A DNA stretch of 63,676 bases, filler included, from Octopus bimaculoides (Eukaryota), in NCBI RefSeq assembly GCF_001194135.2. It is 4 parts of 4 records of this genome, joined end to end, with 100 filler letters (N's around TTAATTAATTAA, not from the genome) between each part and the next. Parts side by side here need not be neighbours in the genome. Positions count along the whole stretch, not along the records: positions 29,594 to 60,298 come from NC_068984.1; 3 more parts are not named here. One strand, 5' to 3'. The notes beneath the pieces are model-generated. The model was not told the origin of the DNA. It ran no database searches and saw only the letters and a program-made list of their open reading frames with translations. The position numbers were made by a program, and so were the translations under genes. Every line of letters begins with the position of its first letter. The stretch's first letter is position 1. Positions 29,915 through 57,608 of this stretch are shown piece by piece.

Positions 29915-30136
29915 TTATTGCAAATCTGCACGATGAACAACCTTTTTGGTCTTCCGAATCGAGCCCAGTACAAATAGCTCGTTTCCATTCCCAGCCCTTG
30001 AACAACCAACATAGAGCTGTCTGTGAGAAAATCAGGGTTCCATCAGATGAAGCCCAGTTACTTTCAGTGACTGTACTTGGGACCTATTGATTGACAGTGC
30101 ATAGCTAACTCACACTGGAAACTGAAGTCTTTTGAA
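29915..30136 (-). pseudogene. Helitron RepHel Pif1-family helicase C-terminal fragment
   Basis: FKRLQFPV*VSYALSINRSQVQSLKVTGLHLMEP*FSHRQLYVGCSRAGNGNELFVLGSIRKTKKVVHRADLQ*; matches FPxRxAFAxTINKSQGQ and FSHGQLYVAxSRV; two internal stops. Confidence 0.9.
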
Positions 30137-30660
30137 CTATCTGCGCAACGACTAGTTGCCCATTAGCATTAATGTCGCCGATTTGCATTGAATTTTGTTC
30201 GAGCCAAGTATCACATATTGCTCAATTGAAATTACTCCAATCAACGATCGTATTTCTACTTTGTATAGAAGATTCATGCATCATATCATTTTGTGACATA
30301 TCATTATAAGCAACAATAAATGATTAAAAGGATGTTATACAGGGGCACATGGCTTTTGTCAAAGTATGACCTGTGACGGATTGATTTTTGCGTTTTACAA
30401 AGCTTGCAGTAGCAAACTTTTCCATCAATAATGTTACCACTTATGATAGGGCCACATGATGAATTGCAATATTCACAGGTGTACCTGTTCATAATTAAAC
30501 GGCACCGTGCCAACCATTGTAGAATGTTGTTGAATGATTCTGCAAATTTAGTAATATTCCACGATTCTTCTAACATTATTTTGCGATTGAGGGTTTCAAC
30601 TTGGGTACAATAAACTGCAGTGCCGCTGGTCTTCCGCGTGACATCTCGATCGATTTCCAA
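30137..30660 (-). pseudogene. Merlin (IS1595/IS1016-like) transposase, N-terminal half
   Basis: LQWLARCRLIMNRYTCEYC...DGKVCYCKLCKTQKSIRHRSYFDKSHVPLYNILLIIYC (Zn ribbon). After a frameshift it reads MSQNDMMHESSIQSRNTIVDWSNFN*AICDTWLEQNSMQIGDINANGQLVVAQI, ending where the VVEIDE catalytic motif is expected. Confidence 0.8.
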
Positions 30661-31048
30661 TTCTAAACTAAACTAATTTTGGTGTGGTGTAAACTCCTTT
30701 TGGCAAAGTAAGTTAAATAAGTTGACTTACTTCCCTTTGCTTCTTTTATTAGTTATCTCCCCTAAATTTTCATTTATTTTTTTGTACGCACTGTAATGAA
30801 AATTTGGGAATCTAAAATTTCAGGATTGCGGGTCCGGATTCGGCCCGGAATGTTTTTAATTAACTTACGGAGTGAGCCTTATTCCAAGATGGTGTGATAT
30901 GTTGGGCTACGGCCTCTAGGAGTAAAGTTGAAAAAGTGTGACACACTGACACACTGACATTCGCATTTATTATATTAGATATATGTGTGTGTCTATATAT
31001 ATAAATATATATATACGCATACATATATACATACATATATGCGTATAA

Positions 31049-33639: not shown

Positions 33640-34373
33640 NNNNNNNNNNNNNNNNNNNNNNNNNNNNNNNNNNNNNNNNNNNNNNNNNNNNNNNNNNNNN
33701 NNNNNNNNNNNNNNNNNNNNNNNNNNNNNNNNNNNNNNNNNNNNNNNNNNNNNNNNNNNNNNNNNNNNNNNNNNNNNNNNNNNNNNNNNNNNNNNNNNNN
33801 NNNNNNNNNNNNNNNNNNNNNNNNNNNNNNNNNNNNNNNNNNNNNNNNNNNNNNNNNNNNNNNNNNNNNNNNNNNNNNNNNNNNNNNNNNNNNNNNNNNN
33901 NNNNNNNNNNNNNNNNNNNNNNNNNNNNNNNNNNNNNNNNNNNNNNNNNNNNNNNNNNNNNNNNNNNNNNNNNNNNNNNNNNNNNNNNNNNNNNNNNNNN
34001 NNNNNNNNNNNNNNNNNNNNNNNNNNNNNNNNNNNNNNNNNNNNNNNNNNNNNNNNNNNNNNNNNNNNNNNNNNNNNNNNNNNNNNNNNNNNNNNNNNNN
34101 NNNNGGACGTCTGTATAATCATTAAAACATTTATTTAATTATGAAAATAGAAAGAAATTATACATTAATCCCAATTTTTGTAAGCAGTTGTATCCGTAAA
34201 AAGATATATGAAATGAACGTGCGTGTGTATGTGTATGTGAGAGAGAAAGAGAGATAGAGTGAATGAGTGAAGTTGTGTGTCATTGACTTACGTTGGCTGG
34301 CACGGCAAGTACGAAACTTTTGAGGAGGCAGATGATTGGGGTGATTTGGAAGATGTGGAGAAATGCCGTCTTT

Positions 34374-34670
34374 TCAGTGGAGCGCTTCTTTGTAGGCAAT
34401 GTTTCTCGTTTTCCCTTCTGATGCACAAATGTATAGACTTTGTGGCCTGCCAACACGGGAGCATCGAACGTAATGTTGACCGTGGGAGAACACTTGCTCT
34501 GTGAGATCTAAACCAACCATTTGCAATGATTGATCCTGTGCCTTATTTATTGCCATTGCAAAGGAGAGTTTGATAGGAAACTTGTAGATCGTATCGGAAA
34601 GGGAAGGGACATTGGAGTTATAAGAACTTCTTGACCAGCGGCCGGTCCATTCAAGATGGTTGCCTGTAGG
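34374..34670 (-). pseudogene. Helitron RepHel Pif1-family helicase C-terminal fragment
   Basis: LQATILNGPAAGQEVLI...(frameshift)FPIKLSFAMAINKAQDQSLQMVGLDLTEQVFSHGQHYVRCSRVGRPQSLYICASEGKTRNIAYKEALH*. Confidence 0.92.
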
Positions 34671-34699
34671 ACACGGGAGTAGAAATTTTGATTATCATG

Positions 34700-34981
34700 C
34701 GGAACTTTCTAGGAAATCCTCGGAACTTTCTAGGAAATCCTCGGAACTTTCTAGGAAATCCTCGGAACTTTCTATGAAATCCTCGGAACTTTCCAGGAAT
34801 TACCACACTCGGAACTTTCCATGAAGTAGTTCAACCTCGGAACTTTCCAGGAAACCAAATCCTCGGAACATTCCAGGAAGTCCCTTCCTCGGAACTTTCC
34901 AGGAATCTCTCGGAACGTTCCAGGATGTACCACTCTCGGAACTTTCAAGGAAGTAGTTCATCATCGGAACTTTGCAGGAAG
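34700..34981 (+). repeat. Array of 12 conserved cores CGGAACTTTCYAGGAA with 5-12 nt variable spacers
   Basis: Unit starts at 34700, 34721, 34742, 34763, 34784, 34810, 34838, 34864, 34890, 34911, 34937 and 34965; the array continues into the gap. Confidence 0.95.
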
Positions 34982-35737
34982 NNNNNNNNNNNNNNNNNNN
35001 NNNNNNNNNNNNNNNNNNNNNNNNNNNNNNNNNNNNNNNNNNNNNNNNNNNNNNNNNNNNNNNNNNNNNNNNNNNNNNNNNNNNNNNNNNNNNNNNNNNN
35101 NNNNNNNNNNNNNNNNNNNNNNNNNNNNNNNNNNNNNNNNNNNNNNNNNNNNNNNNNNNNNNNNNNNNNNNNNNNNNNNNNNNNNNNNNNNNNNNNNNNN
35201 NNNNNNNNNNNNNNNNNNNNNNNNNNNNNNNNNNNNNNNNNNNNNNNNNNNNNNNNNNNNNNNNNNNNNNNNNNNNNNNNNNNNNNNNNNNNNNNNNNNN
35301 NNNNNNNNNNNNNNNNNNNNNNNNNNNNNNNNNNNNNNNNNNNNNNNNNNNNNNNNNNNNNNNNNNNNNNNNNNNNNNNNNNNNNNNNNNNNNNNNNNNN
35401 NNNNNNNNNNNNNNNNNNNNNNNNNNNNNNNNNNNNNNNNNNNNNNNNNNNNNNNNNNNNNNNNNNNNNNNNNNNNNNNNNNNNNNNNNNNNNNNNNNNN
35501 NNNNNNNNNNNNNNNNNNNNNNNNNNNNNNNNNNNNNNNNNNNNNNNNNNNNNNNNNNNNNNNNNNNNNNNNNNNNNNNNNNNNNNNNNNNNNNNNNNNN
35601 NNNNNNNNNNNNNNNNNNNNNNNNNNNNNNNNNNNNNNNNNNNNNNNNNNNNNNNNNNNNNNNNNNNNNNNNNNNNNNNNNNNNNNNNNNNNNNNNNNNN
35701 NNNNNNNNNNNNNNNNNNNNNNNNNNNNNNNNNNNNN

Positions 35738-36474: not shown

Positions 36475-37454
36475 AAAAAAGGAAACTCTGCAGCTGAAGC
36501 GACTCGAAATATGCTATCAGTTTATGGGAAAGAATTCTTGAATGAAAGAACTTGCAGAAGATGGTTTGCAAAATTCAGAAGTGGAGATTTCAGCCTTGAA
36601 GATGAAAACCAAACAGGACGTCCAGTTGAGTTTGATGATAAGCTCCTTGAGGCATTACTTGAAGAAAATCTTGCACTATCAGTTGAAGAATTGGCAATAA
36701 AGCTTAGTTCAAACCATACGACTGTTCATCGTCATTTTCAACAACTTGGAAAGGTTCCTAAACTTGGAAAATGTGTGCCTCATGAATTGTCCGAAAGCAA
36801 CCGCAAATTCCCAGTTGACATCTGCTCTTCTCTCCATTCTCGCAAACTCATTTCACCCTTTTTGGATAAACTTGTGACTGGTGACGAAAAATGGATCTTC
36901 TATTGAAATGTTAAACATCGTAAACAGTGACTTGGCAAAAGGGAAAAAGTTCAACCACAACCAAGAAGGGAACTTCAAGGGGAAAAAGGTTCTTCTCTCT
37001 ATCTGGTGGGATTGCAAAGGAGCAATTCACTTTGAATTGTTACCAACTAATGCAACAATCAATGCTCAAGTCTACTGTCAGCAATTAGAACGTTTGAACC
37101 AAGCTTTGAAGGAAAAAAGACCCGCTTTAGTGAATCATAAAGGTGTGATGTTTCATCAGGACAATGCGTGACCCTACACTGCAAAGATCACATTACAGAA
37201 GATCGAAGAGCTTGGTTGGGAAAAAATTCCTCATCCACATTATTCTCCCGACCTTGCTCCTTCAGACTACCATTTGTTTCGTAGTTTACAGAATCATTTG
37301 GGAGACATAACTTTGGCAAGCCAGGAGGAGGTCGAAACTGACATTTCAGAGTTGTTCGCTTTGAAACCAAAAGAGTTTTACATTGATGGGATGAAAAAGC
37401 TTGTAAATAGATGGAAGTAAGTCATAGATAATGAGGGAAAGTACATTGATGATT
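36475..37454 (+). pseudogene. Mariner (DD34D) transposase, 5'-truncated and dead
   Basis: KGNSAAEATRN...RRWFAKFRSGDFSLED...GRP HTH, CVPHEL, TGDEKW, HQDNA and YSPDLAPSD, with 34 residues between the last two Asp. Stops at 36904, about 36928, 37169 and 37418, plus one frameshift near 36985. Confidence 0.97.
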
Positions 37455-41140: not shown

Positions 41141-41550
41141 GGCGAGCTGGCAGAAATGTTTAGCCCCTTGTGGGAGAAATGCTTAGCTGTATTTCGTCTG
41201 CAGTTACGTTCTGAGTTCAAATTTCGCCGAGGTCGACTTTGCTTTTTATCCTTTCGGGGTCAATAAATTAAGTACCAGTTACGCACTGGGGTCGATGTAA
41301 TCGACTTAATCCCTTTGTCTGTCCTTGTTTGTCCCCTCTATGTTTAGCCCCTTGTGAGCTATAAAGAAACGTTGGGCGAAATACTAAGCGGTATTTCGTT
41401 CTGAGTTCAAATTCCGCCGAGGTCAGCTTTGTCATTCATCCTTTCGAGGTCGATAAATTAAGTACTACTCGCATACCGGGGGTCGATCTAATCGACTGGC
41501 CCCCTCCCCCAAAATTTCTGACCTTGTGCCAAGAGTAGAAAAGAATATTA
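41141..41550 (+). mobile_element. Head-to-tail pair of SINE family A copies
   Basis: Two GAGTTCAAAT...GGTCGAT.TAATCGACT modules; junction near 41365. Confidence 0.9.
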
Positions 41551-51124: not shown

Positions 51125-51550
51125 GCTAAGGCAGTGTGAGCTGGCTGAAGCGTTAGCGCACCGGAGAAAATGCTTAGTGAAATTTATTCTTCTTTTATAC
51201 GTCCTGAATCCAGATTCCGCCGAAGTCGACTTTGTCATGCTTTCTGGATCGATAAAATAAGTAATAGTTGAACAATGGGGTCGATGTAATCGACCTCCCT
51301 CTCCCACAAAATTTCAGACATTTTGCCTATAGCAGAAAGAATTATCATTGGTCAAATTTTTAGCACAATGGGCAAAATGCTTAGCAGTATTTCGTCCGTC
51401 TCCACGTTCTGAGTTCAAATCTCGCCGAGAGATTTTGCCTTTCATCTTTTCGAGGTCGATGAAATAAGCACTGGTTACGCAGTGGGGTCAATGTGATAGA
51501 CTCATCCCCTCCCCCAAAATTTCAGACCTTGTGCCTATGGTAGAAAAAAA
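51125..51550 (+). mobile_element. Two adjacent SINE family A copies
   Basis: Family A body and tail at about 51125-51345 and 51360-51550. Confidence 0.85.
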
Positions 51551-52097: not shown

Positions 52098-52305
52098 TAA
52101 GGCAGCTAACTGGCAGTATCGTTAGCACGCCGAGCAAAATCCTAAGCGGCATTTCGTCCAGGTTTACGTTCTAAGGCTGACTTCGAGGCTGACTTCGCCT
52201 TTCAAGGGTCGATATAATAAGTACCAGTCGAGCGCTGGGGTCGATGTAATCGACCTTCCTCTTCCACCAAAATTGCTGGCCTTGTGCCAAAATTTGAAAC
52301 CAATA
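52098..52305 (+). mobile_element. SINE family A
   Basis: GGCAGCTAACTGGCAGTATCGTTAGCACGCC head and GGGGTCGATGTAATCGAC hairpin. Confidence 0.88.
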
Positions 52306-52532: not shown

Positions 52533-52748
52533 CAAGCGGAGCTGAAAAGTGCCTCGTTTCAAGGGTGTCACGAAAGGCCTGGTTGGAGACCCAACATTCC
52601 GAGTTCTTTTACAGGGCTTAGAAAAACTGAAGGACCGCTGCAATAAGTATGTGAGTCTGAGAGGGGAATATGTTGAATAAAATCATAATTAACTGATCCG
52701 CCTTTATTTCCTTTTACCCAAAACCAGGAGCTTTTCAGTATCTCCTCG
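52533..52748. mobile_element. Mariner-type MITE, copy 1
   Basis: TA|CAAGCGGAGCTGAAAAGT...CTTTTCAGTATCTCCTCG; interior colinear with 57409-57608. Confidence 0.85.
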
Positions 52749-54554: not shown

Positions 54555-54900
54555 GGTGGCAACTGGCAGAATCGTTAGCACGTGAGGTAAAATGTTGAGT
54601 GGTATTTCGTCAGTTACGTTCTCAGTTCAAATGCCACCGAGGCTAACTTTGCCTTTCATCCTTTAGGGGTCGAAAAATTAAGTACCAGTTGAACACTGGA
54701 GTCGATGTAATCGACTTACCCCTTCCTTGAAATTGCTGGTCAAAATTTCAAATCATTATATTTTTATTGATAAGGGAGCGAGCTGGCAGAGTCGTTAGCA
54801 TGCAGGATAAAATGTTTAGCTGTATTTTGTCCGTCTGTACGTTCTGTGTTCAAATTCCGTCGAGATCGATTTTTATCCTTTCGATCGATAAAATAAGTCG
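54555..54900 (+). mobile_element. Two SINE family A copies (second is 3'-truncated)
   Basis: Heads at about 54555 and 54775. Confidence 0.85.
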
Positions 54901-57408: not shown

Positions 57409-57608
57409 CGAGGTCGTGCTGAAAAGTTCCTGGCTTTAAGGGTGTCGCGAAAGGCTTTCCGTGTTCCTTTACCGGGCTTAGAAAATCTGTATAACCGCTG
57501 CAATAAGTGTGTGAGTCTGAGAGGGGAATATGTTCAATAAAATCATAATTAACTGATCCTCCTGTATTTTCTTTTACCCAGAGCCAGGAACTATTCAGTA
57601 CCCCCTCA
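57409..57608. mobile_element. Mariner-type MITE, copy 2 (200 bp)
   Basis: TA TSD at 57407-08 and 57609-10; TIRs CGAGGTCGTGCTGAAAAGTTCCTGGCTTT and TGAGGGGGTACTGAATAGTTCCTGGCTCT. The interior resembles the mariner 3' end. Confidence 0.92.

What the first reader, a model, noticed from the sequence alone, without database searches (positions are those of the whole stretch)
34700..34981. Helitron-linked repeat-spacer array preserving overlapping HSF-like and STAT-like motifs
Seen: 12 cores CGGAAC(T/A/G)TTC(T/C/A)A(G/T)GAA separated by 5-12 nt variable spacers, starting 30 bp from a Helitron helicase remnant. GAAnnTTC is intact in 11 of 12 units and TTCnnnGAA in 10 of 12, and most substitutions fall in the n positions (CT/CA/CG; TAG/TAT/CAG/CAT/AAG). 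Known: TTCnnnGAA is the STAT GAS element, TTCCTAGAA is also a BCL6 site, nGAAnnTTCn is the HSF repeat, and Caenorhabditis Helitrons spread heat-shock elements via internal minisatellites. Inferred: a mobile multimeric stress or immune enhancer cassette. The third pentamer is off-register for a perfect HSE, so STAT fits at least as well.
Basis: partly seen in the sequence, partly recalled or inferred. Interest (0 to 1): 0.72.

Follow-up and report, generated by a model that had tools for sequence, protein, structure and literature searches.

The report
Minisatellite beside a dead Helitron tail
A short tandem-repeat array in an octopus genome lies flush against the broken end of a dead Helitron transposon gene; its units resemble transcription-factor sites, but nothing here shows it is mobile or regulatory, so it is best read as an ordinary transposon-associated minisatellite.

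Summary
Twelve cores CGGAACnTTCnAnGAA lie at 34700-34980 (+), against 0.17 expected by chance. GAAnnTTC is intact in 11 units and TTCnnnGAA in 10.

Three corrections:
- The array runs straight into a 756-N assembly gap, so its length is unknown.
- The spacers are not free-varying. Units 5-7 recur as units 10-12 (60/70 identical, 127-bp higher-order period), and units 1-4 are a recent 21-bp expansion.
- The Helitron remnant is 0-3 bp away, not 30. It lies on the minus strand and covers only the last ~105 codons of RepHel, with two frameshifts and a 5-codon deletion.

Against the enhancer-cassette reading:
- No unit holds a canonical three-pentamer HSE.
- Strict STAT sites (TTCCnGGAA) occur in 4 units. 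A relaxed NF-kB pattern fits 6 units, so the choice of factor is open.
- The excess of substitutions at n positions is weak (p 0.014 by events, 0.14 by positions).
- Three other octopus Helitron helicase tails lack the array, and two same-family copies read on as helicase where the array starts.

One result favours past constraint: cores are far more conserved than spacers (2/16 against 8/10 variable sites, p=0.001).

No octopus genome could be searched by DNA, so copy number and mobility remain untested. Verdict: a transposon-associated minisatellite of low interest.

The parts
34700..34981 (+). Minisatellite array. At least 12 units of a 16-bp core (consensus CGGAACTTTCCAGGAA) plus 5-12 nt spacers that mostly end in CT. 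Cut off by the assembly gap.
34700..34783 (+). Young sub-block next to the Helitron. Four near-identical 21-bp units (CGGAACTTTCTAGGAAATCCT; unit 4 has G13T).
   Evidence: (96% matches)
34784..34910 (+). Higher-order repeat, copy 1. Five variant units of 26, 28, 26, 26 and 21 bp, 127 bp in all.
34911..34981 (+). Higher-order repeat, copy 2. Units 10-12 match units 5-7 at 60/70 positions without gaps. Truncated by the gap.
34982..35737 (.). Assembly gap of 756 N that begins inside the array. The rest of the array and its far flank are unknown.
34377..34698 (-). Pseudogene fragment covering the last ~105 codons of a Helitron RepHel (Pif1-like helicase C-terminus). It has two frameshifts (near 34682 and 34600) and a 5-codon deletion (KRLQF). 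The stop codon is at 34374-34376. On this strand the array lies immediately 5' of it.

Best explanation
This is a locally amplified, decaying minisatellite at the broken 5' edge of a dead Helitron transposase-gene tail in an Octopus genome, most likely O. bimaculoides.

The unit is built from alternating GGAA/TTCC half-sites: (TCCT)C-GGAA-CT-TTCC-A-GGAA. That design produces GAAnnTTC, TTCnnnGAA and GGAAnnTTCC patterns by itself.

The 12 units are copies of one ancestral sequence, not 12 independent occurrences. The array grew by replication slippage or unequal exchange in at least three steps:
1. An old set of 21-28-bp variant units formed.
2. A 127-bp block of five units was duplicated.
3. 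One 21-bp unit at the end next to the Helitron recently expanded to four copies.

Shown: the anatomy, the higher-order structure, the junction with the helicase codons, the decay of the helicase fragment, and the absence of the array at other Helitron tails.

Inferred: the growth mechanism, and that the array has no regulatory or mobile role today. If any factor binds it, the best-kept pattern is the dimeric TTCnnnGAA palindrome.
For: - Tandem head-to-tail units with a 21-bp period at 96% identity, then 26-28-bp variants.
- A 127-bp higher-order period with spacers shared between copies.
- The array occurs once in the 30.7-kb piece.
- It starts within 0-3 bp of helicase codons that continue as helicase in same-family copies P0002 and P0021. 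The junction is therefore specific to this copy and not part of the family design at that point.
- The helicase tail is dead: two frameshifts and a deletion.
- Three other octopus Helitron tails have no array: 29918-30136 in the piece, L001 and L171.
- Since the block duplication, cores and spacers have diverged alike (5/48 against 4/22, p=0.45).
- There is no canonical HSE, and several factor consensuses fit about equally loosely.
- No host exon or RNA family was recognisable in the piece.
- The surroundings are dense in transposons and microsatellites.
Against: - Among the four alignable 26-bp units the core is much better conserved than the spacer: 2/16 against 8/10 variable sites (Fisher p=0.001), and 8% against 50% pairwise difference. 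Uniform neutral decay does not predict this. It points to past constraint on the core, or to homogenisation confined to the core.
- Six of about 8 substitution events fall in the n positions of the two motifs (p=0.014-0.028, post hoc).
- Copy number in the genome was not measured, so a dispersed family cannot be excluded.
- The p=0.45 comparison has little power.
Confidence: 0.5

Rival explanations
1. The array is a cis-regulatory array carried by the Helitron. It would be a cluster of dimeric factor sites (STAT-type TTCnnnGAA or Rel-type GGAAnnTTCC) that drove or modulated the Helitron's own RepHel gene. An internal deletion then brought it next to the helicase tail, giving a non-autonomous derivative that could spread the sites.
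For: - On the coding (minus) strand the array lies directly 5' of the helicase tail. That is the order expected if most of the ORF between promoter region and tail had been deleted.
- The core is conserved about 6-fold better than the spacer.
- TTCnnnGAA is kept in 10 of 12 units.
- There is a precedent in Caenorhabditis. Helitrons there carry repetitive HSEs, including 14 and 85 upstream of the RepHel genes themselves (PMC6927752).
- Mollusc Helentron derivatives carry central tandem repeats (PMC7492417).
Against: - No second copy was seen.
- Three other octopus Helitron tails lack the array.
- P0002 and P0021, of the same family, read on as helicase at the junction.
- No Helitron 3' hairpin or terminus was recognisable in the 270 bp after the stop codon.
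- The 5' side is lost in the gap.
- The two higher-order copies show no core/spacer difference.
- Only 4 of 12 units have the strict STAT palindrome TTCCnGGAA, and none has a strict kB site.
Confidence: 0.27
2. The array is a host enhancer or promoter element unrelated to the Helitron. A 5'-truncated Helitron copy happened to land beside, or in, an existing cluster of factor sites that is kept by selection at this locus.
For: The core is conserved relative to the spacer. GAS-like palindromes are enriched: 10 in 292 bp, against 0.26 per kb in the rest of the piece.
Against: - No recognisable exon or gene lies in 30.7 kb of transposon- and microsatellite-rich sequence.
- The units nearest the junction are recent identical copies, which is typical of slippage and not of selection.
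- The higher-order copies appear to decay evenly.
Confidence: 0.07
3. The cores are subterminal binding-site repeats of a different DNA transposon (as in CACTA, hAT or P-type elements) that inserted into the Helitron helicase ORF. They would then be transposase binding sites.
For: Conserved short cores with variable spacing are typical of subterminal repeats. The array interrupts a helicase reading frame.
Against: - At most 3 bp lie between the helicase codons and the first core, which leaves no room for a terminal inverted repeat.
- All cores point the same way.
- The upstream part of the helicase does not reappear beyond the gap.
- No transposase ORF is adjacent. The mariner at 36475-37417 is a separate element with its own structure.
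Confidence: 0.05
4. The array is partly an assembly artefact. It sits at a contig end next to a gap, so unit number and order may be collapsed or mis-joined.
For: The array runs directly into 756 N. Short-read assemblies break in such repeats. The four identical 21-mers are the kind of run whose copy number is unreliable.
Against: The variant units and the imperfect 127-bp block repeat (86% identity) are too structured to arise from misassembly. An artefact could change the count but not the existence of the array.
Confidence: 0.04

Closest known systems
Helitron-borne heat-shock-element arrays in Caenorhabditis (Garrigues et al. 2019, PMC6927752)
   Same: Repetitive, overlapping factor-like motifs lie physically next to Helitron sequence. 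In that system arrays also lie upstream of the RepHel gene.
   Different: The Caenorhabditis motifs are canonical HSEs bound by HSF-1 in ChIP-seq. They lie inside annotated Helitron consensus sequences and occur more than 10,000 times. Here no unit holds a three-pentamer HSE, only one array was seen, and it abuts a truncated ORF at a copy-specific junction.
Central tandem repeats of non-autonomous Helentrons (Cg_HINE) in the oyster Crassostrea gigas (PMC7492417)
   Same: The host is a mollusc, and tandem repeats are carried by, or associated with, the Helitron superfamily.
   Different: In Cg_HINE the arrays lie between defined left and right flanks with subTIRs, a microsatellite and a 3' palindrome, and the elements hold no coding remnant. 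Here the units are 21-28 bp, no such flanks were found, and the neighbour is a helicase coding tail.
Ordinary eukaryotic minisatellites with variant repeats and higher-order periodicity
   Same: Units are 10-60 bp, arranged head to tail, with variant units, block duplication and a recently expanded end.
   Different: A 16-bp nearly invariant core beside a spacer that varies in sequence and length (p=0.001) is more uneven than simple neutral decay predicts.
STAT-site-bearing transposons such as primate MER41 LTRs (my own knowledge, not checked here)
   Same: The idea that a transposon disperses TTCnnnGAA elements.
   Different: MER41 is an LTR with one or two validated sites per copy and thousands of copies. 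Here neither binding nor dispersal is shown.

Membership tests
Minisatellite | Head-to-tail tandem copies of a 10-100 bp unit, above chance | tested here: met
   TRF scores 186 and 166. 12 cores against 0.17 expected.
Minisatellite | Variant units and/or higher-order period produced by block duplication | tested here: met
   127-bp block: units 5-7 match units 10-12 at 60/70 positions, spacers included.
Helitron element (the neighbour) | Encodes RepHel (Rep/Helitron_like_N plus Pif1-like helicase) | tested here: inconclusive
   Only the last ~105 codons of the helicase are present, and they are degenerate. Full-length relatives P0076 and P0116 carry Helitron_like_N + PIF1 + Pif1_2B. The fragment is therefore Helitron-derived, but no element is present as such.
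Helitron element (the neighbour) | 3' terminus with GC-rich hairpin followed by CTRR; 5' TC; insertion between A and T | tested here: inconclusive
   No convincing hairpin in 34105-34376. Both sides run into gaps (33640-34104 and 34982-35737).
Helitron-carried factor-site array (Caenorhabditis type) | The array recurs in other copies of the element or family | tested here: not met
   0 of 3 other octopus Helitron tails have it. Same-family fragments P0002 and P0021 read on as helicase at the junction. The sample is small and mostly from other families, and a genome-wide count was not possible.
Heat-shock element (HSF site) | At least three contiguous inverted nGAAn pentamers (GAAnnTTCnnGAA or TTCnnGAAnnTTC) | tested here: not met
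   0 matches in the array on either strand. Only the two-pentamer GAAnnTTC is present, 11 times.
GAS element (STAT site) | Palindrome TTCnnnGAA (strict form TTCCnGGAA) | tested here: met
   TTCnnnGAA in 10 of 12 units and the strict form in 4 of 12. This is a sequence pattern only.
GAS element (STAT site) | Bound by a STAT dimer and confers inducible transcription | not testable with these tools
   No binding or expression data were available.
kB site (Rel/NF-kB) | GGGRNNYYCC | tested here: not met
   0 strict matches. The relaxed GGRRNNYYCC (GGAACTTTCC, one base from the classic GGGACTTTCC) is present in 6 of 12 units.
Helentron HINE central repeats (bivalve type) | Array lies between conserved flanks with subTIRs, a microsatellite and a 3' palindrome | tested here: inconclusive
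   One flank is helicase coding sequence with no subTIR or palindrome. The other flank is lost in the gap.

The most novel reading that the evidence does not exclude
The array is the promoter or enhancer module of an octopus Helitron family. It would be a multimer of dimeric STAT- or Rel-type sites kept under selection at the level of the transposon, and non-autonomous deletion derivatives would scatter it through cephalopod genomes. That would be a second, independent case, after the Caenorhabditis HSE Helitrons, of Helitrons rewiring a stress or immune response.
Probability: 0.08. Interest if true: 0.6.

Novelty: new member of a known kind. Interest (0 to 1): 0.2.

Why it matters
As it stands, it matters little. 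Tandem repeats beside transposon fragments are common in octopus genomes, which are about two-thirds repeats (PMC13282606). Motif matches at consensus level in copies of one ancestral unit carry little weight.

It would matter if the array proved to be a dispersed Helitron module bound by an immune or stress factor. That would extend transposon-driven rewiring of inducible transcription to cephalopods.

The one feature worth following up is the sharp contrast between a nearly invariant 16-bp core and a fast-diverging spacer.

Tried and rejected
- **Exact two-core pattern** (CGGAACTTTCYAGGAA, 4-12 nt, CGGAACNTTC). It gave 0 hits in viral contigs and 0 in JGI metagenomes.
- **Relaxed two-core pattern.** It hit more than 119 metagenome, 17 viral and 30 prokaryotic contigs. 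These are mostly 11-bp tandem repeats GGAACNTTCNN in unrelated microbes, with no Helitron protein nearby (tblastn) and no demonstrable homology. I rejected them as relatives.
- **Translations of the array in five frames** searched against 5.8 billion proteins. Nothing was found.
- **Search with same-family fragment P0021.** No close relative with a contig on record. P0001 and P0002 are not on record either. Other copies of this Helitron family could therefore not be fetched.
- **Full-text search for the 15-mers.** No paper holds them.
- **Coding reading.** The 21-bp units keep a frame, but the 26- and 28-bp units do not.
- **Structured single strand.** Folding as DNA gives z=-1.67, which is unremarkable.
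- **Rfam.** No hit in the piece.
- **Helitron 3' hairpin.** None found.
- **Origin of the unit from the adjacent helicase sequence.** Only a 9-bp imperfect inverted match was found (I5), which I take as chance.

Full report
**Observation.** The piece (29594-60298) holds exactly 12 matches to CGGAACTTTCCAGGAA at up to 3 mismatches. All are on the + strand between 34700 and 34980. One hundred dinucleotide shuffles give 0.17 +/- 0.43 matches. Tandem Repeats Finder reports a 21-bp period (4.8 copies, 96% matches) at 34700-34799. It then reports 26- and 47-bp periods to 34981. Spacers are 5-12 nt long. The core varies only at positions 7, 10, 11, 13 and 16. GAAnnTTC is intact in 11 units and TTCnnnGAA in 10.

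**Three corrections.**
1. The array stops at 34981 only because a 756-N assembly gap begins there. Twelve units is a minimum, and the far flank is unknown.
2. The spacers are not free-varying.
   - Units 5, 6, 7 align to units 10, 11, 12 over 70 ungapped bases at 86% identity, spacers included. For example, ttaccacact matches gtaccactct, and gtagttcaacct matches gtagttcatcat.
   - This gives a 127-bp higher-order repeat of five units.
   - Units 1-4 are near-identical 21-mers.
   - Most spacers end in CT or CCT, so the conserved unit is nearer 18-19 bp.

**The neighbour.**
- *Position.* On the minus strand, 34698-34377 encodes the last ~105 residues of a Pif1-like helicase, followed by a stop at 34374-34376. 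The reading is MIIKI / YSRVLQATILNGPAAGQEVLITPMSL / SDTIYKF-PIKLSFAMAINKAQDQSLQMVGLDLTEQVFSHGQHYVRCSRVGRPQSLYICASEGKTRNIAYKEALH.
- *Decay.* It has two frameshifts and lacks five codons (KRLQF) that relatives have.
- *Closest proteins.* The closest named proteins are Octopus bimaculoides fragments at 79% and 74% identity.
- *Helitron origin.* An exhaustive phmmer scan found 4429 relatives. The full-length ones (P0076, P0116) carry Helitron_like_N + PIF1 + Pif1_2B, and the window matches only residues ~1470-1573 of 1573. The fragment is therefore a Helitron RepHel tail.
- *Species.* Dispersed repeats in the piece match an O. bimaculoides chromosome locus (L001, CM046625.1) at 75-86% identity, which confirms an octopus origin.
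- *Junction.* Same-family copies P0002 (...DAPIMHMIIIKLYSRVLQ...) and P0021 (...CNGTRMIIKISICSRVLQ...) continue as helicase upstream of the MIIK codons. In the window the array begins at that exact point. The codon before the ATG (34701-34699, CGC = Arg, as in P0021) overlaps the first core. The junction is therefore 0-3 bp wide, not 30 bp.
- *Orientation.* On the coding strand the array lies 5' of the tail.
- *Termini.* No GC-rich 3' hairpin was found in the 270 bp after the stop codon.

**Is the array linked to Helitrons in general?** Only a small sample could be examined.
- A second helicase tail lies at 29918-30136 (-). It belongs to another family and has two stops. It has no array.
- An O. 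bimaculoides locus (L001) has no core at up to 3 mismatches within 10 kb either side of the helicase gene.
- An O. sinensis locus (L171) has none from the contig start, 5.4 kb upstream of the gene, to 10 kb downstream.
- A non-octopus relative (L002) has none within 10 kb either side.
- The indirect routes all failed. These were exact and relaxed DNA patterns in viral, metagenome and prokaryote collections, translations of the array, and look-ups of same-family proteins.
- The relaxed pattern did return many hits. They are 11-bp tandem repeats GGAACNTTCNN in microbial contigs without Helitron genes. I do not regard them as relatives.

**Is there constraint on the motifs?**
- *For.* Among the four alignable 26-bp units the core has 2/16 variable sites against 8/10 in the spacer (Fisher p=0.001). 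Pairwise difference is 8% against 50%.
- *Weak.* About 8 substitution events can be inferred, and 6 fall in the five n positions. That gives p=0.014, or 0.028 within the motif span. The motifs were chosen after seeing the variation. Counted by distinct positions the result is 3 of 5 (p=0.14).
- *Against.* Since the 127-bp block duplicated, cores and spacers have diverged alike (5/48 against 4/22 mismatches, p=0.45, low power). Units 1-4 are recent copies and carry no information.

**Which factor, if any?**
- The unit is a string of alternating GGAA/TTCC half-sites: TCCT-C-GGAA-CT-TTCC-A-GGAA.
- No unit holds a canonical three-pentamer HSE.
- The general GAS pattern is present in 10 units and the strict TTCCnGGAA in 4.
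- GGAACTTTCC is one base from the classic kB site GGGACTTTCC. It fits the relaxed GGRRNNYYCC in 6 units and the strict kB consensus in none.
- A position-11 change is tolerated by the loose GAS reading, yet it breaks the strict GAS and the kB reading. The phrase 'substitutions fall in n positions' therefore depends on which factor one picks.
- The single strand is not unusually structured (z=-1.67).

**Interpretation.** The best-supported reading (about 0.5) is a locally amplified minisatellite at the broken edge of a dead Helitron gene tail. It would have been built by slippage or unequal exchange in at least three steps. Its factor-like motifs follow from the palindromic design of one ancestral unit.

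The main rival (about 0.27) is that the array was the Helitron's own regulatory module and was brought next to the tail by an internal deletion. This fits the 5' position on the coding strand, the conserved core, and precedent. In Caenorhabditis, repetitive HSEs sit upstream of RepHel (PMC6927752). Oyster Helentron derivatives carry central tandem repeats (PMC7492417). Against it stand the copy-specific junction, the lack of the array at other tails, and the absence of any second copy.

The lesser rivals are:
- a host enhancer unrelated to the Helitron (0.07);
- subterminal repeats of another transposon (0.05), which is unlikely because no room is left for a terminus;
- partial misassembly at a contig end (0.04).

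**Verdict.** This is a real repeat that genuinely adjoins a Helitron remnant. The enhancer-cassette interpretation is not established and its HSF part is contradicted. It is a new member of a known kind (a transposon-associated minisatellite), with interest 0.2.

Noticed in passing
window 29918-30136 (-): A second Helitron helicase C-terminal pseudogene, covering the last ~73 codons with two in-frame stops. It belongs to a different family from the one at 34377-34698, points the same way, and has no array beside it. Immediately upstream on that strand (30307-30672) is a Cys-rich ORF with no Pfam match.
   Followed up: partly
window 36475-37417 (+): A Mos1-type mariner transposase pseudogene (HTH_48 and Transposase_1 domains). 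Its frame is broken by stops near 36904 and 37169. It is a separate element about 750 bp beyond the gap.
   Followed up: partly
window 41177-41545, 51235-51550, 52195-52303, 54587-54873: Several diverged copies of a dispersed, tRNA-like (SINE-type) repeat. The same family occurs in the O. bimaculoides locus L001 at 75-86% identity.
   Followed up: partly
window 52597-52747 and 57457-57607: Two copies of a 151-nt dispersed repeat (88% identical). Each lies inside an ORF that reads ...WLWVKENTGGSVNYDFIEHIPLSDSHTYCSG... and has no Pfam match.
   Followed up: no
proteins P0003-P0007: Predicted proteins that consist of 2-7 tandem copies of the Helitron helicase C-terminal ~65 residues. They come from the pseudoscorpion Cordylochernes scorpioides, the prawn Macrobrachium nipponense and one ENA contig. 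In other words, tandem arrays of Helitron 3' portions are being read as ORFs.
   Followed up: no
loci L005-L170, e.g. L133 1-110, L106, L034: 11-bp tandem repeats of the form GGAACNTTCNN (for example GGAACCTTCTA, GGAACATTCAG, GGAACTTTCCA) recur in many aquatic metagenome contigs, giant-virus MAGs and bacterial MAGs. They were found only because the search pattern selects for them. No control pattern was run, so over-representation is unproven.
   Followed up: partly
L020 4350-4563: A prokaryote-like metagenome contig has 10 intergenic 21-bp repeats with a conserved core GGAACTTTCTYGGAAGG and a variable 4-6 nt tail. The layout looks like the octopus 21-bp unit, but the context is unrelated.
   Followed up: partly
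window 29594-60298: There are 11 assembly gaps inside the 30.7-kb piece, and TRF returns about 150 rows, mostly microsatellites. No ORF of 70 or more codons has a host-gene Pfam domain, and there is no Rfam match. The region looks intergenic or intronic and saturated with repeats.
   Followed up: partly
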